A stretch of DNA of 64,000 nucleotides from Mytilus californianus (taxonomy: Eukaryota): NCBI RefSeq assembly GCF_021869535.1, contig NW_026262712.1, forward strand, positions 5,084,001 through 5,148,000, read 5' to 3'. The translations under genes were made by a program, and so were the position numbers. Every line of letters begins with the position of its first letter. Position 1 is the first letter of the stretch. The notes beneath the pieces are model-generated. The model did not search any database. It saw only the letters and a list, made by a program, of their open reading frames with translations, and was not told where the DNA came from. Of the stretch, positions 24,460 through 43,779 are shown piece by piece.

Positions 24460-24462
24460 ATG
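24460..24462 (+). CDS. Peptide gene A coding exon 1 (ATG only)
   Basis: CAGTAAAATG|GTAGGT; phase 0 matches exon 2, which lacks its own ATG; same design seen in gene B. Confidence 0.7.
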
Positions 24463-25180
24463 GTAGGTATACATTGTTACACATTGCCATGGAGTTGTCA
24501 GTTATTTTTAAATTAATTTCGACAGACGAGTCTGAATTTCATTTTCTGTATCTGTCATCGTTTTTTGTACATTGTCGATTGTTTTTGGTTAGTATATGTA
24601 AGTTAATTTTGACAAAAGAAATAGTTTGACACATTAATTATGAAGTAAAATACAGAAAACCGGCTACAAACGCACCAATAAGAAGGTTGGAACAAACCAT
24701 AAGTTTTTGTTTTAAAGAATATATTTAGTAATGTCCTCCGGAGTTAAGCATTTTTCATACAGTTATTAATGTCTTTAAACATGTTAAAGCAATATGAAAG
24801 TTCAAATTCAATAAAATTTTGGTACATATACATTTTTATTCTGAAAAGAAATCTTTAATTTGTCCTCCAAATTTAGAAGAAATTTACTTATTTTAATTAT
24901 TGGCTTCCCAGACAAAAATTCACCGACATGTTTTTGTATGCAGTGACTGCAACTTTTCTTTCTCGTAAAAATCCGGTGATCGCAATACGCAGGTGCGAAG
25001 GGGAAAACCAAAATGCCAGACAAAAGTCAAACGTAAAGACTGCTGCGTCATCGGAATAAACTGCATCTTAATGTACATGGTTTACATGTGCATACTTCAA
25101 TATCCATGCGTTTTTGTTGATTGTTTAAAAAGGGGACAAAAGGTAAACTTCTGCTTCAAAACATGACAAAAAAAAAAAAA

Positions 25181-25546
25181 TGAAAACAACACGTTTGATA
25201 ATTTCATGCGTCCGAAGCGCTTTTCTGGATTTACCTTCATCAGGAACGCTCAAAGCCAAACATTTGAAATCCAAGGGATGTATAAGTACCACCGAAACAG
25301 TTAAAGAGCTATATGACAAAAATACATAAAACAAGTAGCCAAATTCATCTAAGGTCAACTTTGCCTGAAGGAGTTGAAACCTTAGTTTCTATATAATTTC
25401 AAAATTTATAAACGGACAATTTTAGAGAGGGTTGTTATAAATCATGTCAGTACCGAAGTTCTGACTACTGAGCTGATAATACCCTCGGGGACTGAAAGTC
25501 CACCAGCAGAGGTATCGACCCAGTGATGTAAAAAAGTGAAAACAAC
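25181..25546 (-). mobile_element. Retrozyme-like monomer (356-bp period) in intron 1 of gene A
   Basis: Bounded by TGAAAACAAC direct repeats; near-identical to the 59541-59985 tandem; contains a hammerhead motif. Confidence 0.75.
25206..25251 (-). ncRNA. Minimal type I hammerhead ribozyme
   Basis: Minus strand GAGCGTTC-CTGATGA-AGGTAAATCCA-GAAA-AGCGCT-TC-GGACGCAT: stem I pairing, conserved core, palindromic stem III, UC cleavage site. Confidence 0.85.
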
Positions 25547-27418
25547 AATTTATTGGCTGCCATATTTTCATATCCACACTAAGCGAGTGAAATATTTTAT
25601 TGACGATTATACGATATGGTTACGTACAAAATGATAAAAGTGTGCACAGAAAACTAAGTTTATGATATATGCATGCATTGGTTCAATGATTGGATTATCA
25701 TTTTTGTCACCTTTCAATCGTTTCATATGTCTTAAAGATTTGTTTCAAGTATTTATTTTAAAGCTTCAATTTTTAAGCAATTCTCAAAAAGTGCGTAAAC
25801 CGAATACATAATTTTGCGATCATTTTATTCATATCTAAATATGAACTTAAGACCTAATTAAAAAATAAATTGTTTATTTCCAACTTTTCAAAAGTCTGTT
25901 AGTAAAATATCTGTTTTTAGGTATAAGTTGCAATTTTCTAATATACCGATACCTGTTTGTCAATTTGTCAAATTGGTTGCTAAAATAGTTCCGAAAGTAT
26001 GAAACATGTATTATTAGTTTTAAAGTGTCCAAGAGACATTATACAATATATATTGGGTTAGTAAATTCAATATGGGGTGAGATCAATTGCGATGGCTCGC
26101 TGGGGGGTTATTAAACTTAATGAACTCAACAACAAACATAGTCATAGAAAAGAAACAGCATATTAACACTGGTCACCAGAGTTGATGGTCATTTTGTAAT
26201 TCGGATTGAATTCATATTTTTTAATCAGTTTGTTCCTTTTTTCTATTTTTGACGTTTTTGTGTATTTGTTTTTCTATTTCATGTTTCTCTTTAAACTTGT
26301 ATCTAACTTTTTGAGAAGAATGTATCTATATATCTAAATAAAGCCTACAACATTACACCGGTGTTCATATGTCATAAATCGATAGAGAAAAAAAAACAAA
26401 TCCGGGTTACAAACCAAAACCGAGGGAAATACATCAACTATCAGAGGAAAACAAAGAACAACAGGAAAACCATAGTGCCAAAAAAAAAAAAAAAACGCTA
26501 ATACACATAGAAACGAAGTATGTGATAACAACTGCCATATTTCTGACTCGGTACAGGACATTTTAAAAACAAATGGTGTGATGGACCTGGTTTATAGGCA
26601 TACCAAACCTCCCGCTTTATGAGAATGTTAAAAATATATCGATAACACACAACATGACAGACAAATAATATAATAGTCTTCACAACATGCAAACCGTAGA
26701 ACAACAACGAACATATTCCATCAACGAAAAACAGAACGAGATATTGTTTGTCTTTTAGTTACATGAGTTATGAACAAAATGAATTTAGGATTTTCTTATA
26801 TTGGGTCCATATTTGGCTGGCAAATAGTAAATTACTCAAGCAGAAGCAGTACGATCTTTAAGAACGGACTGTAGCAGCAACATGACTTTTTATTTAAAAT
26901 GATAACTTGTAAACGCTAATACGTTCTGCATGATTTAACGTGAAGTTTATTGAACAATTAATTGCTAGTTTAAAGTCAATATCTAGAAATAATGCGAAAG
27001 AAAGGAAAAATTAATTTAACAATACATATTTTAGGTATATATCTGTTTATTTAGTTAAACCTACTGTAAGTGTATGTGTAATTGTTAGGATCAGCAATTA
27101 TAAGGTCTACAATGAAATTCATATTTTAATGATGTAATGTTGTGGGTGTTTGTCTATCATATTACACCCATGTTAACCTTATATTAACAGACAAAGATGT
27201 ATGATGAGTGTCAACAAGAAAAGTCATTGGATTTATCACGTGAAACCTTACTGTCTGTAGAGTGAATTGACGCCATTATATTATTTGAAATATTTATTTG
27301 ATTAAATTTCAAAAATTTCACTGAGTTTATTATTAAAAAGAAAATGGAGAAAACACAACTTATCTTGTTTTTGTTTCTAGGTAATCAAACATTGATTATG
27401 AGTATTTAATATTTTTAG

Positions 27419-27661
27419 GACTTAAAACTGAGTTGCTTCCTAGTAGTTTTAGCTGTTTGTGCAAGTCTTACTATCGCTCAAAAAAAGACCACCATTACTG
27501 GGGATTTAACCAAGAACAAAGACTCAACAAGAATAGATCTAGGAATATTACACAAACGTAAAAACTTTGAAATTGGAGGATCAGTTTTTGGAGACAATCG
27601 GGGAAATCGAGGTGCAAAAGTAGGCTTTAAATGGAAGTTTGGAAAGAGATCTACAGCATGG
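27419..27661 (+). CDS. Peptide gene A exon 2: signal peptide, 54-aa cationic Gly-rich mature peptide, GKR site
   Basis: TTTTTAG|GAC...TGG|GTATAT; open 81 codons DLKLSCFLVVLAVCASLTIA-QKKTTITGDLTKNKDSTRIDLGILHKRKNFEIGGSVFGDNRGNRGAKVGFKWKF-GKR-STAW; clear homology to 37012-37356. Confidence 0.9.
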
Positions 27662-28289: not shown

Positions 28290-28449
28290 AACGGTGAACA
28301 TTTTGAAGTTCGAGTTATCATAAACCATTGTGACTTCAATGTTTATGATATAAATGAAGACAGTGTTATCACAGTTGATGAGATTTATGAAATATTTCCT
28401 CAAAGAACTGATGCACATAGGTTGTTCAAGGCGCTTGATTCTACATCAG
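28290..28449 (+). CDS. Peptide gene A exon 3: C-terminal extension, EF-hand 1
   Basis: TTCTTAG|AAC...G|GTTAGT, 160 bp phase 0 to 1; NGEHFEVRVIINHCDFNVYDINEDSVITVDEIYEIFPQRTDAHRLFKALDSTS with EF loop DINEDSVITVDE. Confidence 0.88.
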
Positions 28450-29058
28450 GTTAGTATAGTTCTATAATGATTTTGTAGGGGTGATGTTTCTTGAAATTAC
28501 TATTTTTGTTTGGTCAACGACATTATCAAAGAATGTATATTTCAATACCATTTTCTCTATATTTCTCAAACCAAGCAATTCACATTATCATATATAGTAA
28601 GTTATATTGAACAACTGCATGTATATTCAAGAAATGAGAGTACATGTGTTCCATCATGATACTGTTTTTACTAGTCTAATATAGTTTTGTTGTGTCTGTT
28701 TCGTGTGCTGCCTCGTAAGATATTTGTCTTCCGCTAGACATCTTAAACAATACCATTATACATATGGACATTCCGAGGACAATTTTCTTATCTGTAACAT
28801 TAGAAAGCAACATGGGTACTTTTGTTATTGAAATTTGCAACCGTTTCAGATTATTATCAGTTTAGACATATTTTCTGTTTTCAACATAACAATTATGAGC
28901 AGTTTTGTTATCTTCGCTTTTATTTTTATTTTCAAAAAAATTAGGCATGGTTGATTACAACGTTTTATGAAATCATGTTTATGTTTAAATGGTATGAATG
29001 CATATTATACCACAATAAAACAGGTATTAAGATTTTAAGAATGTTTCTTAATTTTCAG

Positions 29059-29144
29059 TTGATGGTAAAGTGACCATTGACGAATTCAAGATGATGGCTC
29101 CACAAGTTATAAAGAAATGTGGATATAGCAAATATTCGTATTAA
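29059..29144 (+). CDS. Peptide gene A exon 4: EF-hand 2 and stop
   Basis: TTTTCAG|TT GAT GGT AAA..., phase 1; (V)DGKVTIDEFKMMAPQVIKKCGYSKYSY*, TAA at 29142-29144. Confidence 0.88.
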
Positions 29145-37011: not shown

Positions 37012-37356
37012 TTAAAATAGCAGAGCAGTGGGTGTTTTCTTTCTTCCAAAGTCCCACTTAAAACCCGCAAGCGCACCTCGATCTCCCCGGTTGTCCCCAA
37101 AAATTGATAAACCTAATTGAAGGTTTTTACGTTTGTGTGATACACCAAGACTTCCCCCTCGATGTCCTTTTGATGTACCAAATCCTCCTGCGTTGAACCC
37201 CCAATTCCTATGTCGATGAGAAAGGCTGAGATCTGCTCGTGTTCCAATATCTTCACTACGAGTCAACTTTCCTCTAAAGATTGGTTTATGTTTCTGAGCA
37301 ACAAGATAATGTGTGCAAAGAGCTATAACCACAAGTAAATAACTTGATTTTATATC
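37012..37356 (-). CDS. Peptide gene B exon 2: signal peptide, 83-aa cationic Gly-rich peptide, GRKK, short tail (no EF-hand)
   Basis: CTTTTTAG|GAT ATA AAA...; DIKSSYLLVVIALCTHYLVA-QKHKPIFRGKLTRSEDIGTRADLSLSHRHRNWGFNAGGFGTSKGHRGGSLGVSHKRKNLQLGLSIFGDNRGDRGALAGFKWDF-GRKK-TPTALLF*; overlaps track ORF 37012-37332. Confidence 0.9.
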   Translation of the reverse strand, partial: DIKSSYLLVVIALCTHYLVAQKHKPIFRGKLTRSEDIGTRADLSLSHRHRNWGFNAGGFGTSKGHRGGSLGVSHKRKNLQLGLSIFGDNRGDRGALAGFKWDFGRKKTPTALLF

Positions 37357-38802: not shown

Positions 38803-40554
38803 GTGTTGGCATTTAAAAAGTCTTCCTTGTTGTGAGTCTTAGTATTAAACAATTGTGGTCAAAGTTTTCGTTTATAAAAATGATTAATTCTACACAATAA
38901 AAACTATAATTAAAATTATGGTACATTCCATAATACGTTTCACCGCATTTAGTTTGTTTACGATGTCAATGTGTAATATAACCTTTTAATGAAAATATGA
39001 TGTCTTTATTCAGTACACCATTTGAAGGTTTTTCATATAATAAATGCATAACAACATGTTGATTATCAATAATGTAAGATTACATTTACGTGCGATGAAT
39101 ATTTCTCTCGGCTTTGTAAGTATTATATTATAAAAACCACAGTATTTTTGTCATTTTGTAGTTTATCAAATTTTAAATAGAACGACTCTTTTCCTTTAAC
39201 AACAGTATACACTCTTTAAAAGTTTGAATGTCCTTTTGGTATTATTCGCCTCTCTTTTGAAATTAACTTCTAAACAAAAGGGTCCAAAATGTACTCTATT
39301 AGTGCAATTCCTTCATCGAAAACCACATCATAAATGACATTTTACGTTTTCTGTCACATGCATTACTTATTATGTGCGATACGCCGCACGACATACTTTA
39401 AAAAGACGCTAATATTACGGTTCAAAATGATGTATCTATAAATTTATTTGATCTTCCAAGAGGATGTTGAACCTTTATTGTACAATCCTTTGCTTCAAAT
39501 TCTGTATGCATATTTATGCAGGATGTCAACCGTGGATGACCGCATGTAATCCAATTATTAAATGTTATAATAAATCATTTACTTAATAACTAAAATAACT
39601 CCTTCGATTATATGTTTTAAACCACACATGGTCGCTGAACAAAAATATCAATATACAATATATCACAATCGCCGTAACTCATGCACAACCGTTCTGCCTT
39701 TTGTATTGTTCACATAACAATAAAATTGAGAATGGAAATGGGGAATGTGCCAAAGAGTCAACAACCCGAGCAAAAAGCAGATAAAACAAGACGAAGGCCA
39801 CCAATGGGTCTTCAACACAGCGAGAAAACCCGGCACCCAGAGGTGGGGTTTAGCTGGCCCTGAAAAAATATGAACAGTTTTAAATATCGTAAACAACTAT
39901 AGGCCTAAACATTTGTGGATAATTTACCTTATCTGGTAAGAATATATATCAGGTGTCCACACTTCGCTAAAATAATATGACAACAATTTGGCATTTAGAT
40001 TTTAGGGTGATATTCAAATATTTTGTGAGATTCTACTTAAGGATGCACTTCTATGAGGTTTAGGAGTGTGTGTCAAATGTTCGGACTGCTTAGATATTTT
40101 TCTACGATTCAGGGAAAACTAGTTTGCCCCATAACACCCATTTTCCTTTGTATATAAGACTTCAATAGCTTATAAAAGGTCATTTACCAAAATTTAAGCA
40201 GATTCTTGATTTCTTTTCTATCGATTTGAGACCAAAATAATACTAATGCAAATATAAGTTTAAAGTCAGAGTCAGCCTTTTCCCGCCATTTTTTAAAATC
40301 TAATATCTCGAAAAGGAGCTCCATAACCTATTAATATTGTTAGCTTATATTGTTCCTTAACTAATAATTTTTCGACTTATTGAATCAATTTTTATTTCTT
40401 GATTTTTTTTTAATTTCACCTAAGTTCATCCTTTAGTTAATAATGTCTTTGAACAGATTCCAGTGTCAGGTGCTGAAATTCTATAAAATGTTAACCGTAT
40501 GTGTGATTTACATCTACAATTATGTATAGACCAGTTCTTTATTCGTTTGTATCT

Positions 40555-40683
40555 TCACTTGAAGCCTAGTTTGGCACCTCGATTTCTCCGATTGTCTCCG
40601 AAAACTTATCCTCCAAATTCAAAGTTTTTACGTTGGTGTGATATACTCAAACTCCATCCTCGGTGTCATCTTGAAGTACCGAA
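40555..40683 (-). pseudogene. Third peptide paralog, internal exon-2 fragment only
   Basis: FGTSR*HRGWSLSISHQRKNFEFGG*VFGDNRRNRGAKLGFK*; aligns to gene B module 1/2 and gene A C-terminus; flanked by sequence homologous to gene A intron 1 (27095) and to 31012. Confidence 0.85.
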
Positions 40684-41718: not shown

Positions 41719-42400
41719 GTTAACGCCCCGGTGATCCGTCGCATTCGATCTCACCCCATATGGAATTTACTGACCCCATATATATATCGTATTAGGTCAC
41801 TAGAACACTATTTAACTAATAAAACAGGTTCATACTTTAGAACTATTTTACCTAACAATCAATTTGACAAATTGACAAACAGGTATCGGTAAATTTAAAA
41901 CGAATACACCACAAAGATATTTTACCAACAGATTTTTGAAAAGTTGGAAAAAATCAATATATTTTTAAGTTAGATCTTAGGTTGATATTTAAATATGAAT
42001 GACATGATCGTAAACTGAGGTCTGTATGTATTCATTTTATGCACTTTTGGGGAAATTGCCCTAAAAAAGATGCTGTTAAATAGGTACGTGAGAAAAAACT
42101 TTAACACATACATACATGTATGAAAAATGCAGTACTCTGGAGAACATTACTCAACATATTCTTTTTAAATTCTAATGGTTTTTCCAACCTTCTTATTGGT
42201 GCATTTGTAATAAATGTGTCAAACTATTTATTTTGTCAAAATGAACTTACATAGAATAACCAAAATCCATCGACCACCGTGTACAGAAAATGACGAAAAA
42301 TACCGAAAAGGACATTCAGACACATCAGTCGAAATAACTGAGAACCCCATGGCAATGTGTAAAAATGTATAAATTTCAATATATGAACAACAATACCTAC

Positions 42401-42468
42401 CATTTTACTGTGTAGTTTTCTCTAGAAAGTTGAATTTACAGTTTGATTCGAATCTATCTTATTATATA
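42401..42468 (-). promoter_or_regulatory. Duplicate of gene A promoter and ATG exon (belongs to the pseudogene)
   Basis: Minus strand TATATAA 42468-42462 and ACACAGTAAAATG|GTAGGT (ATG 42403-42401); reverse-complement match to 24330-24470; Inr altered. Confidence 0.75.
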
Positions 42469-43779
42469 GCGTAATGATTAGAATATCCGTCCTGATTCTG
42501 CAGCTTTGAATACAATATTTTTGCGGTCATACTTTCATATGATTAATAAGCGTCATACTTAGAAAAATAACAAAAAAATCAAATCCGCAACTTGAAAGAT
42601 TATATGATAAAACAGTTCGACCACATACGATGGAGAGAAATTTCACAATGTCAATGTTTAATATGACATATCAGTCTGAAAGAGTCATTAAGTACAAAAC
42701 ATCAATTAATTGTATATCAAAAATGCATAAAAAACATGGTGTGTATCAATAATATGTGTAGCAAATTACGTGATTAGAATATCACCATAAACGTTTGTAA
42801 ACACTATGTTGTAAAATAAAAACTAATTATGTAAATTTATAACATTGTCATCACACCGGATCTTTTCTTTTAATTATGTATTTCACAAATATAACAAAGC
42901 TTTAACATGGAATCTGACATGTCAGATAAATATATTGGTCTAAGAAACAACATTTTAATGACTTTTGCCGCATGTATTTCGTTTTTGCATGTATTATATA
43001 TATATATAGATAAGAATTTATGCCTTTAATGATTAAACAAAATAAGAAAGAACACGGAAATGTATGTATCTTCCAAACACTGGCGTTATCCCTAAATTGA
43101 CCATGACGCCATTGAAAACGATCTAACGAAATATTCTTTTTTGTGTCGCGAAAAACACGATGACTGCCACTAAGAAAAAAGAAAATTAAGGCTTTTTACT
43201 GCGCATATATTTATTTGCTCCATTAATAACTTTTATTACTTCTAGACTAAAATGTAAGATATGTAATTTTCTTTCATTTCTAGTTTCCATTATTCCTCTT
43301 ATCAATTTGATATCCAAATGTTCAACATTCTGATATGCACAAAGTGGAGAGTTGATTCCAAGTGTGCAATTTCAAATCATAAATTCAATAAAAAAAAAAG
43401 ACGACATAGTCAAAAAGAAAAAAGACAAACAGGAAAACAATAATAACAGAATGTTACACAATAAACTATTGATTATTAACACGAACCACTGACAATAAAG
43501 CGGCGTGGCACAACAAAAGACAAAAAACTATATACAATGGACCAGTGTAGACTTGGTTCAACTAAATTTTTATCATACGTAACAGTGGTAAGAATCGGAC
43601 ATGACTCAAAAAGAATTCAAAGAAAATAGCAAAAATACCCAACTCCAAGGAAAATTCTAAACCGCAAAGTCCATTTTAAAATAGAAAAACAAAAGCCCAA
43701 ACATAGATTCAAAGGATAGATTCAAATAGTTGACAGTTAAACAAATTCTGTTTTATGTTTAACATAACCACGCTGTTAG

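What the first reader, a model, noticed from the sequence alone, without database searches (positions are those of the whole stretch)
27590..27643. Peptide C-termini resemble the outer-membrane-protein beta-signal (BAM substrate mimic hypothesis)
Seen: mature peptides end GAKVGFKWKF (gene A) and GALAGFKWDF (gene B): terminal Phe, aromatic at -3, alternating hydrophobics; this is among the most conserved parts of the paralogs. Established: Gram-negative beta-barrel proteins end in such a motif recognised by BamA, darobactin inhibits BamA by mimicking it, and attacins were reported to block OMP synthesis. Inference (speculative): these peptides may engage the BamA lateral gate or insert as beta-hairpins rather than lyse membranes non-specifically.
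Basis: inference. Interest (0 to 1): 0.72.

Follow-up and report, generated by a model that had tools for sequence, protein, structure and literature searches.

The report
Mussel peptides shaped like bacterial barrel strands
Two mussel genes encode secreted, glycine-rich, strongly positive peptides that are predicted to fold like a piece of a bacterial outer-membrane barrel, ending in the same kind of last strand; they are probably attacin-like defence peptides, and whether they jam the bacterial barrel-assembly machine is untested.

Summary
Window 27590-27643 encodes GDNRGNRGAKVGFKWKFG in gene A, which is Mytilus californianus LOC127705592 and is spliced and transcribed. Gene B (minus strand, 37.3 kb) ends GALAGFKWDF. 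In every family member a basic cleavage site, sometimes preceded by Gly, follows the terminal Phe.

Across 17 family clusters the Gly five residues before the end is invariant and the last Phe is kept in 16 of 17. The end fits the published beta-signal consensus, and F-x-W-x-F fits the motif that lectin-like bacteriocins use on BamA strand 1.

The resemblance covers the whole peptide, not just the end:
- AlphaFold2 gives a 4-strand (A) or 6-strand (B) meander.
- The nearest folds are trimeric-autotransporter anchors, gasdermin and MAC hairpins, and outer-membrane barrels.
- Pfam gives only sub-threshold YadA_anchor hits.

All these matches are weak, and nothing shows homology to bacterial proteins.

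The closest published analogue is an insect attacin modelled as an outer-membrane beta-barrel former. The likeliest reading is therefore a new bivalve family of attacin-like beta-sheet defence peptides. The beta-signal-like end may simply be the terminal strand of a membrane-inserting sheet.

BamA mimicry remains possible (about 15%) but is untested. The scan noted a related gene elsewhere in this genome (s1-312156).

The parts
24461..24463 (+). Gene A exon 1, coding part (the ATG only). The donor GT follows it.
   Evidence: Sequence. The contig X11 record 13 carries 35 letters upstream of 27418, which fits an exon 1/2 junction there. The NCBI protein P0025 starts M-D-L-K.
27419..27661 (+). 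Gene A exon 2: the rest of the signal peptide, the whole mature peptide, the G-K-R site, and S-T-A-W.
   Evidence: An AG acceptor lies before 27419. Spliced contigs join it to exon 3. It is identical to P0025.
27479..27640 (+). Predicted mature peptide A: 54 aa, net charge +8, pI 10.5, no Cys, 15% Gly. It is predicted as four antiparallel strands.
   Evidence: Properties. AlphaFold2 gives pLDDT 85.1, with all five models at 79-85 and strands at 2-13, 16-27, 30-39 and 44-52.
27611..27640 (+). The beta-signal-like last strand G-A-K-V-G-F-K-W-K-F, the core of the finding.
   Evidence: It superposes on the last strand of the Hia, AtaA and YadA anchors.
27641..27649 (+). G-K-R: an inferred amidation donor plus a dibasic cleavage site.
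   Evidence: Read from the sequence. A basic site follows the terminal Phe in every member (GKR, GRKK, RR, KKR, QKR), while the Gly is present in only some.
28290..28449 (+). Gene A exon 3: start of the acidic EF-hand extension.
   Evidence: Spliced contigs. Pfam EF-hand_6 and EF-hand_1 hit P0025 just below their cut-offs. The extension has net charge -5 and pI 5.0.
29059..29144 (+). Gene A exon 4: the second EF-hand loop and the stop codon (29142-29144).
   Evidence: The intron 28450-29058 has GT..AG ends and is skipped in a contig of X11.
37012..37356 (-). Gene B last exon: signal-peptide remainder, an 83-aa mature peptide, G-R-K-K, a 7-residue tail, and the stop. There is no EF-hand extension.
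   Evidence: The M. galloprovincialis orthologue P0009 has the same architecture.
37048..37296 (-). Predicted mature peptide B: 83 aa, net charge +10. It carries one more 27-aa two-strand module than A and is predicted as six strands.
   Evidence: AlphaFold2 best model has pLDDT 80.8, but the other four models are lower.
37048..37077 (-). The beta-signal-like last strand of gene B, G-A-L-A-G-F-K-W-D-F.
40540..40683 (-). A decayed third copy: a pseudogene fragment of the mature-peptide exon with three in-frame stops.
   Evidence: tblastn and translation.
42393..42469 (-). A copy of gene A's exon 1 and 5'UTR region, 90% identical. It could be the first exon of gene B or of the pseudogene.
   Evidence: blastn. 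Which gene it belongs to was not resolved.

Best explanation
Genes A and B encode secreted precursors of a bivalve family of cysteine-free, glycine-rich, strongly cationic peptides. Each precursor has a signal peptide, then a mature peptide on a single exon, then a basic cleavage site. In A-type genes an acidic EF-hand extension follows, as in mytimycin precursors.

The mature peptide is built from 27-residue two-strand modules, giving 4, 6 or 8 strands in different members. It is predicted to form an antiparallel meander with 9-12-residue strands, one hydrophobic/aromatic face and one small/polar/cationic face. That is the pattern of a transmembrane beta-barrel wall.

I infer that these peptides act like insect attacins. 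They would bind the anionic Gram-negative outer membrane, insert as an amphipathic sheet, and probably oligomerise into barrel-like pores. Three 4-strand or two 6-strand units would give 12 strands.

On this reading the conserved end (hydrophobic-G-hydrophobic-basic-W-x-F) is the last, barrel-closing, interface-anchoring strand. It looks like a beta-signal because it answers the same physical constraints.

What is shown: the sequence, the gene models, transcription and splicing, conservation, and family range. What is predicted: the fold. What is inferred: processing, antimicrobial function, insertion and oligomerisation.
For: Gene models and expression:
- Models.
- Spliced contigs.

AMP-type precursor:
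- The mature peptide is cationic (+8 in A, +10 in B) and the extension is acidic (-5).
- The signal / dibasic site / EF-hand layout matches what is described for mytimycins (PMC8004829).

Family range:
- There are 17 real clusters among 1.84 billion representatives. None looks bacterial by sequence; only the Mytilus members carry a taxon name.
- No paper contains its motifs.

Fold of peptide A:
- pLDDT is 85, with all five models at 79-85 and four strands.
- The best Foldseek hits are the Hia and AtaA anchors, at TM 0.78-0.80 and rmsd 1.7-1.9 A over all 54 residues.

Fold of peptide B:
- Six strands.

Other lines:
- Language-model neighbours are gloverin, attacin, hymenoptaecin and diptericin clusters, plus small OMP barrels.
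- UniRef names the gene B orthologue 'Attacin C-terminal domain-containing protein'.
Against: - No activity data exist for any family member.
- The alignments behind the models are shallow (6 and 17 close relatives, Neff 1.9). Four of the five gene B models are poor.
- AlphaFold may render any Gly-rich alternating sequence as OMP-like hairpins, so the fold evidence and the Pfam hint are not fully independent.
- The current Pfam Attacin_C model does not hit any member.
- A net charge of +8 to +10 per unit would make a small closed barrel electrostatically costly.
- The one raw RNA-seq run showed almost no reads on the exons, so tissue and inducibility are unknown.
- Internal K-R-K sites could cut the peptide into smaller products.
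Confidence: 0.5

Rival explanations
1. BAM mimicry. After reaching the outer membrane, the free C-terminal strand pairs by beta-augmentation with strand 1 of BamA at the lateral gate, or is taken as a pseudo-substrate. This blocks outer-membrane-protein assembly, as darobactin and the C-terminal peptides of lectin-like bacteriocins do.
For: - Gene A fits the beta-signal consensus exactly, and 16 of 17 members fit its relaxed form (PMC10945584).
- F-K-W-K-F fits [aromatic/hydrophobic]-x-[aromatic/hydrophobic]-x-[aromatic/His] with Trp at the centre. That is the motif bacteriocin C-terminal peptides use on BamA strand 1.
- Isolated beta-signal peptides inhibit assembly in vitro.
- The last strand superposes on the BAM-recognised last strand of trimeric autotransporter anchors.
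- The motif Gly is invariant and the terminal Phe is near-invariant.
Against: - No binding test was possible with these tools.
- The bacteriocins need a lectin domain that docks on BamA loop 6. These peptides have none.
- In the models the last strand is already paired inside the peptide's own sheet.
- The Trp is replaced by F, V, L or G, and the first Phe of the motif by V, L or I, in divergent members. That suits a generic amphipathic strand.
- The end chemistry varies between members (amide donor present or absent).
- The same features follow from barrel-wall physics alone.
Confidence: 0.15
2. The precursor is also cut at the conserved internal H-K-R-K site or sites. This would release about 27-residue two-strand hairpins. 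The C-terminal one would run from K-N-F-E to K-W-K-F, amidated in gene A. Such products would act as ordinary cationic membrane-active hairpin peptides, not as a 4-6-strand sheet.
For: - K-R-K lies exactly at the module boundary and is conserved (H 12/16, K 14/16, R 12/16, K 12/16).
- The module length of 27 residues equals the insertion/deletion unit between members.
- Multi-copy peptide precursors cut at dibasic sites are common (general knowledge).
Against: - The site is not basic in the divergent members P0016 and P0018.
- The equivalent boundary of the first module is often not dibasic, reading H-Q-R-G or H-K-W-G.
- The models place it in a tight turn within a continuous sheet.
Confidence: 0.1
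3. Attacin-type indirect action. The peptide stays at the surface, binds LPS through its basic residues, and lowers outer-membrane-protein synthesis or perturbs the outer membrane without forming a defined pore and without touching BAM.
For: - It has high positive charge, with basic clusters at the strand ends.
- It has attacin- and gloverin-like features.
- Carlsson et al. 1998, as cited in PMC7924397, reported LPS binding and inhibition of OMP synthesis by attacin.
Against: - The predicted strands are long enough to span a membrane, and one face is consistently hydrophobic.
- No homology to Attacin_C could be shown.
Confidence: 0.1
4. It is not a defence peptide. It is instead a secreted signalling peptide (the G-K-R amidation signature is typical of neuropeptides) or a structural, matrix-type glycine-rich protein.
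For: - It has an amidation/dibasic signature.
- There are no functional or tissue data.
- There were almost no reads in the one raw RNA-seq run.
- The EF-hand tail has no known role.
Against: - The size, charge, acidic propiece and copy-number dynamics (paralogues, a pseudogene, module gain and loss) are typical of mussel AMP families.
- The amidating Gly is absent in many members.
- The language-model neighbours are insect AMP families.
Confidence: 0.15

Closest known systems
Insect attacin, gloverin and diptericin glycine-rich peptides (Pfam Attacin_C PF03769, Gloverin PF10793), in particular the Hermetia illucens attacin Hill_BB_C10074 (PMC10690985)
   Same: - Both are secreted, cysteine-free and Gly-rich (15-18% here against 14-22%), and cationic.
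- Both give an AlphaFold amphipathic antiparallel sheet whose structural neighbours are transmembrane beta-barrels.
- The attacin has a proposed 12-strand oligomeric pore and shown outer-membrane action.
- These families are the language-model neighbours of the mussel peptides.
- UniRef labels the gene B orthologue as an Attacin_C protein.
   Different: - The current Pfam model gives no Attacin_C or Gloverin hit.
- The host is a mollusc, not an insect.
- The peptides are much shorter (54-109 aa).
- They have a regular 27-residue module architecture.
- A-type genes carry an EF-hand propiece.
- The conserved G-F-K-W-x-F end is followed directly by a cleavage site.
Membrane anchor of trimeric autotransporter adhesins (Pfam YadA_anchor PF03895; Hia 2gr7/2gr8/3emo, AtaA 9vnj, YadA 2lme)
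   Same: - Both are four antiparallel strands of about 54 residues.
- The superposition runs C-terminus to C-terminus: model residues 1-54 on Hia 1043-1098, rmsd 1.7-1.9 A.
- Both end in an aromatic residue on a beta-signal-type strand.
- It is the only Pfam family that hits the mature peptide: 6 members in all, 13.6-17.5 bits where listed, best E 0.0045.
   Different: - All hits are below the 22.7-bit gathering score.
- hhalign of the family profile against the YadA anchor gives probability 0.1%.
- The exhaustive profile search found no bacterial protein.
- There is no pore-plugging helix and no passenger domain.
- It is a eukaryotic, intron-containing gene.
- I read this as analogy, not homology.
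Bacterial OMP beta-signal and its mimics (darobactin; C-terminal peptides of lectin-like bacteriocins LlpA/B and pyocin L)
   Same: - The terminal strand fits the consensus (polar)-x-G-x-x-[aromatic/hydrophobic]-x-[aromatic/hydrophobic].
- It also fits the aromatic-x-aromatic-x-aromatic arrangement with a central Trp.
   Different: - Recognition by BamA or BamD is untested.
- There is no receptor-binding domain.
- In the bacteriocins the dyad is never at the extreme C-terminus and the Gly is usually absent. Here both canonical features are present, so the end is closer to a substrate signal than to those inhibitors.
Mytimycin precursors of mussels
   Same: Gene A has the same layout: signal peptide, cationic mature peptide, dibasic site and an acidic C-terminal extension with EF-hands.
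   Different: - The mature peptide has no cysteines, against 12 in mytimycin, and is predicted all-beta and glycine-rich.
- The word-based search with the EF-hand part found only members of this family, not mytimycins.
- Gene B lacks the extension.
Membrane-inserting hairpins of gasdermins and MACPF proteins

Membership tests
OMP beta-signal (motif class) | An aromatic residue at the extreme C-terminus of the finished chain | tested here: inconclusive
   Phe is followed directly by (G)-K/R-K/R in every member, and is kept in 16 of 17. That cleavage makes it the true end is inferred, not shown.
OMP beta-signal (motif class) | The consensus (polar)-x-G-x-x-[aromatic/hydrophobic]-x-[aromatic/hydrophobic], with hydrophobic residues at positions 3, 5, 7 and 9 from the end | tested here: met
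   Gene A fits fully. Gene B fits except for the first polar position. The relaxed form is met in 16 of 17 members. Shuffles reach it in 0.6% (8-mer) and 0.02-0.05% (1/3/5/7/9 rule) of trials. The consensus is from PMC10945584.
OMP beta-signal (motif class) | It lies on the last strand of a membrane beta-barrel domain | tested here: inconclusive
   This is met only at the level of predicted models: the last strand of an OMP-like meander, superposed on the last strand of the Hia, AtaA and YadA anchors.
OMP beta-signal (motif class) | It is recognised by BamA strand 1 or by BamD | not testable with these tools
   No complex modelling and no assay were available.
YadA_anchor (PF03895) | A Pfam score above the gathering threshold of 22.7 bits | tested here: not met
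   Listed scores are 13.6-17.5 bits and the best E-value is 0.0045. Six members hit in all: four of the six mature peptides scanned, plus P0009 and P0001.
YadA_anchor (PF03895) | Detectable profile similarity to a bona fide anchor | tested here: not met
   hhalign of A3 against the last 70 residues of Y. pseudotuberculosis YadA gives probability 0.1%. There were no PDB sequence hits and no bacterial hits in the search of 1.84 billion proteins.
YadA_anchor (PF03895) | Four strands preceded by a helix that fills the pore, plus a passenger domain | tested here: not met
Attacin_C (PF03769) | A Pfam match | tested here: not met
   No hit at E up to 10 for any of 14 family sequences scanned, allowing for HMMER's filters. 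Against this, UniRef names the orthologue P0009 'Attacin C-terminal domain-containing protein'. Language-model neighbours include Attacin_C clusters at 0.83-0.92.
Attacin_C (PF03769) | A secreted, Cys-free, Gly-rich peptide with an amphipathic beta-sheet that resembles barrel walls | tested here: met
   compared with PMC10690985. This shows that it works alike, not that it is related.
Attacin_C (PF03769) | Activity against Gram-negative bacteria through the outer membrane | not testable with these tools
   This needs the peptide and assays.
Mytimycin-type precursor | Signal peptide, cationic peptide, dibasic site and an EF-hand C-terminal extension | tested here: met
   Met for gene A (described in PMC8004829). 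Gene B lacks the extension.
Mytimycin-type precursor | A cysteine-rich mature peptide with 12 Cys | tested here: not met
   The mature peptide has no Cys.
BamA-binding C-terminal peptides of lectin-like bacteriocins | The core motif [aromatic/hydrophobic]-x-[aromatic/hydrophobic]-x-[aromatic/His] | tested here: met
   The ends read F-K-W-K-F, F-K-W-D-F or F-K-W-R-F.
BamA-binding C-terminal peptides of lectin-like bacteriocins | A lectin domain that docks on BamA loop 6 and delivers the peptide | tested here: not met
   The mature peptide consists only of the beta-meander.

The most novel reading that the evidence does not exclude
An animal has evolved, independently of bacteria, a plug-less copy of a bacterial outer-membrane barrel module, complete with a working beta-signal. 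The peptide would then be taken up or held by the target's own BamA lateral gate, either blocking outer-membrane-protein assembly or being assembled into an open pore. That would be the first metazoan host-defence peptide aimed at the BAM machine.
Probability: 0.12. Interest if true: 0.9.

Novelty: new variant of a known kind. Interest (0 to 1): 0.55.

Why it matters
If these are defence peptides, mussels have a second cysteine-free AMP family besides the myticalins. A 2025 paper calls myticalins 'one of the very few' such molluscan AMPs (PMC12294457). The new family would parallel insect attacins in design without detectable sequence relationship.

The regular two-strand module, with natural 4-, 6- and 8-strand versions, makes the family a convenient natural series. 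It could be used to ask how many strands a membrane-inserting sheet needs.

The precise beta-signal-like end gives a sharp and cheap experiment: point mutants, amide against acid, bamA alleles and a sigma-E reporter. That experiment asks whether host peptides can exploit BAM, which is a validated antibiotic target. The finding also bears on the old, unresolved report that attacins lower outer-membrane-protein synthesis.

Tried and rejected
- **Horizontal transfer or homology with bacterial trimeric autotransporter anchors: rejected.** Pfam hits are below threshold. hhalign against YadA gives 0.1%. The exhaustive profile search found no bacterial protein. The PDB sequence searches found nothing relevant. 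The genes have introns and a eukaryotic signal peptide.
- **Two long hits in the profile search (P0014, P0021): rejected as chance.** They are unrelated repeat proteins.
- **Sequence link between the EF-hand extension and mytimycins: not found.** The word-based search returned only members of this family. This is not evidence of absence.
- **Already published under a name: no sign of it.** No paper contains the motifs G-F-K-W-K-F, F-G-D-N-R-G and related strings. The single hit is a chemistry paper, by chance.
- **Expression level and strand from raw RNA reads: uninformative.** The one raw RNA run had almost no reads on the exons. Only assembled contigs of other runs show the spliced transcript.
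- **Taxa of the divergent members (P0015, P0016, P0018, P0020): undetermined.** The records give sample numbers only.
- **A position-specific beta-signal matrix built from real porins: considered and dropped.** It would cost many calls and would not be decisive beyond the published consensus.

Full report
**What is there**

The window is AT-rich (31.6% GC) and comes from Mytilus californianus. My hand-built model of gene A is identical to NCBI protein P0025 (LOC127705592, 'uncharacterized protein', 163 aa).

Gene A has four coding exons:
- The ATG alone, at 24461-24463.
- Exon 2, 27419-27661.
- Exon 3, 28290-28449.
- Exon 4, 29059-29144.

Assembled contigs from public runs carry these exons spliced together. 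One contig matches exon 2 without a mismatch and continues upstream into non-adjacent sequence exactly at 27418/27419. Others join exon 2 to exon 3, and exon 3 to exon 4 across a GT..AG intron. The one raw RNA-seq run had almost no reads on the exons.

Exon 2 holds the rest of the signal peptide, the whole mature peptide, G-K-R, and four more residues. The stretch in the finding, 27590-27643, reads G-D-N-R-G-N-R-G-A-K-V-G-F-K-W-K-F-G.

Gene B lies on the minus strand, with its last exon at 37356..37012. Its peptide ends G-A-L-A-G-F-K-W-D-F, followed by G-R-K-K, seven more residues and a stop. It has no EF-hand exons.

A third copy at 40540-40683 (minus strand) is a pseudogene fragment with three in-frame stops.

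**The observation**

It is confirmed. Both ends have a terminal Phe, Trp two residues before it, and hydrophobic residues at every second position back to the ninth.

Gene A fits the published 8-residue beta-signal consensus exactly. Gene B misses only the polar first position (consensus from PMC10945584).

Shuffles of the same peptides reach these patterns in 0.02-0.05% of trials (alternation rule) and about 0.6% (8-mer). That excludes chance given composition. It does not exclude the fact that any amphipathic last strand would do the same.

The two paralogues are 40% identical, with the last 34 residues as the conserved block. dN/dS there is about 0.35 (few codons).

**The family**

The word-based search found six relatives. 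An exhaustive profile search of 1.84 billion representatives found 19 hits. Seventeen are real members and two are unrelated repeat proteins.

The named members are from M. californianus, M. coruscus and M. galloprovincialis. The taxa of the more divergent members could not be read from the records. I did not verify that.

No bacterial protein and no attacin appeared in the profile search. No paper in the library contains the family's motifs.

In a 17-member alignment:
- The Gly of the terminal motif is invariant.
- The last Phe is kept in 16 of 17 members (Ile once).
- The Lys is kept in 14 of 17 and the Trp in 12 of 17 (otherwise F, V, L or G).
- The first Phe of the motif is always hydrophobic.
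- The preceding strand and turn (S, D, G, G invariant) are at least as conserved.

Directly after the terminal Phe every member has a basic site: GKR, GRKK, RR, KKR or QKR. The Phe is therefore very probably the mature end. Amidation can apply only to the members that have the Gly.

**Architecture**

Members differ by whole 27-residue units. When the units are written in register, the terminal L-G-F-K-W-K-F lines up with the L-G-I-S-H-K-R that opens each unit. The end is thus a specialised half-unit in which polar residues have become aromatic.

The gene A mature peptide is 54 aa, net charge +8, pI 10.5, with no Cys. The part after G-K-R is 85 aa, net charge -5, pI 5.0, with EF-hand hits just under the Pfam cut-offs.

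This cationic-peptide, dibasic-site, acidic EF-hand layout is what has been described for mussel mytimycins (PMC8004829). The mature part, however, is unrelated to them.

**Predicted fold**

With the 17-sequence alignment, AlphaFold2 gives the gene A peptide a mean pLDDT of 85.1. All five models score 79-85. The model has four antiparallel strands at 2-13, 16-27, 30-39 and 44-52.

Gene B gives six strands at pLDDT 80.8 in the best model, but the other four models are poorer.

Along the strands one face is hydrophobic or aromatic, and the other is small, polar or basic. I read this from the sequence against the strand limits.

Structural neighbours of the gene A model:
- The four best Foldseek matches are trimeric-autotransporter anchors (Hia three times, AtaA), at TM 0.78-0.80, rmsd 1.7-1.9 A over all 54 residues and E about 7e-3. 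YadA ranks 13th.

Structural neighbours of the gene B model:
- The ESM-atlas matches are porin, usher, Omp85 and LptD fragments at TM 0.80-0.85.

**Sequence-level hints**

The only Pfam family hitting the mature peptide is YadA_anchor. It hits six members in all. In most of them the match runs to the last profile position. Listed scores are 13.6-17.5 bits against a cut-off of 22.7.

A direct profile comparison with the YadA anchor of Y. pseudotuberculosis gave probability 0.1%. PDB sequence searches gave nothing relevant. I therefore treat the likeness as analogy, not descent.

Language-model neighbours fall into two groups:
- Arthropod glycine-rich AMPs: gloverin/attacin, hymenoptaecin-like and diptericin.
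- Small OMP barrels: Phage_OMP, OMP_b-brl, KdgM and YadA_anchor.

Scores are 0.76-0.94 with low recognition, so these are leads only.

UniRef names the M. galloprovincialis orthologue of gene B 'Attacin C-terminal domain-containing protein'. The current Pfam model gives no such hit.

**Comparison with what is known**

The closest published case is the Hermetia illucens attacin Hill_BB_C10074. It is Cys-free and Gly-rich, and AlphaFold gives it an amphipathic five-strand sheet. [quoted passage not shown]

For the BAM idea there is now a precedent among protein antibiotics. Lectin-like bacteriocins place a C-terminal peptide with the motif [aromatic/hydrophobic]-x-[aromatic/hydrophobic]-x-[aromatic/His], usually with Trp in the centre, on BamA strand 1 (bioRxiv 10.64898/2026.09.25.754295). 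F-K-W-K-F fits that motif. But those proteins rely on a lectin domain to dock on BamA loop 6. Isolated beta-signal peptides of OmpC inhibit assembly in vitro.

**Reading**

The most economical explanation is a new bivalve family of attacin-like, outer-membrane-directed beta-sheet peptides. They would insert and probably oligomerise. The beta-signal-like end would be the last, barrel-closing and interface-anchoring strand (confidence about 0.5).

The rivals are:
- Further cutting at the internal K-R-K into 27-residue hairpins (about 0.1).
- A surface, LPS-binding attacin-type action (about 0.1).
- A non-defence role (about 0.15).

**Limits**
- There are no activity, tissue or processing data.
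- The models rest on shallow alignments (Neff 1.9).
- AlphaFold and profile methods may both be responding to the same glycine-rich alternating pattern, so the lines of evidence are not fully independent.

Noticed in passing
window 40540-40683 (-), and 42393-42469 (-): A decayed third copy of the peptide exon has three in-frame stops. Upstream of it lies intron-1-like sequence that resembles gene A's intron. A 90%-identical copy of gene A's exon 1 and 5'UTR sits 1.7 kb further on. It is unclear whether that exon 1 now serves gene B.
   Followed up: partly
window 25200-25540 and 26330-26700 (intron 1 of gene A): Two stretches have very high read and contig depth, many variants and many loose ends in all runs. 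They are probably high-copy transposable-element fragments that are transcribed somewhere in the genome.
   Followed up: no
P0009 (M. galloprovincialis VDI05149.1), orthologue of gene B: UniRef names it 'Attacin C-terminal domain-containing protein', yet the 2025 Pfam Attacin_C model gives no hit at E up to 10. Either an older or looser model matched, or the name is a weak automatic call.
   Followed up: partly
P0007 (M. coruscus, 301 aa): This annotated protein looks like two neighbouring family genes fused by gene prediction. The first lacks the terminal strand and the second runs straight into the EF-hand exon. P0002 to P0005 and P0003 read through into intron sequence after the cleavage site.
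   Followed up: no
window 27554-27565 (gene A) and 37134-37123 (gene B, minus strand): The conserved H-K-R-K at the module boundary is a potential convertase site inside the 'mature' peptide. If used, the product carrying the finding's motif would be a 27-residue hairpin.
   Followed up: partly
family members P0002 (3 modules), gene B and P0001 (2 modules), gene A and P0013 (1 module): The number of 27-residue modules gives predicted 8-, 6- and 4-strand versions. Three 4-strand or two 6-strand units, or one 8-strand unit, would give the strand counts of known small barrels (12 and 8). This is arithmetic only and was not modelled.
   Followed up: no
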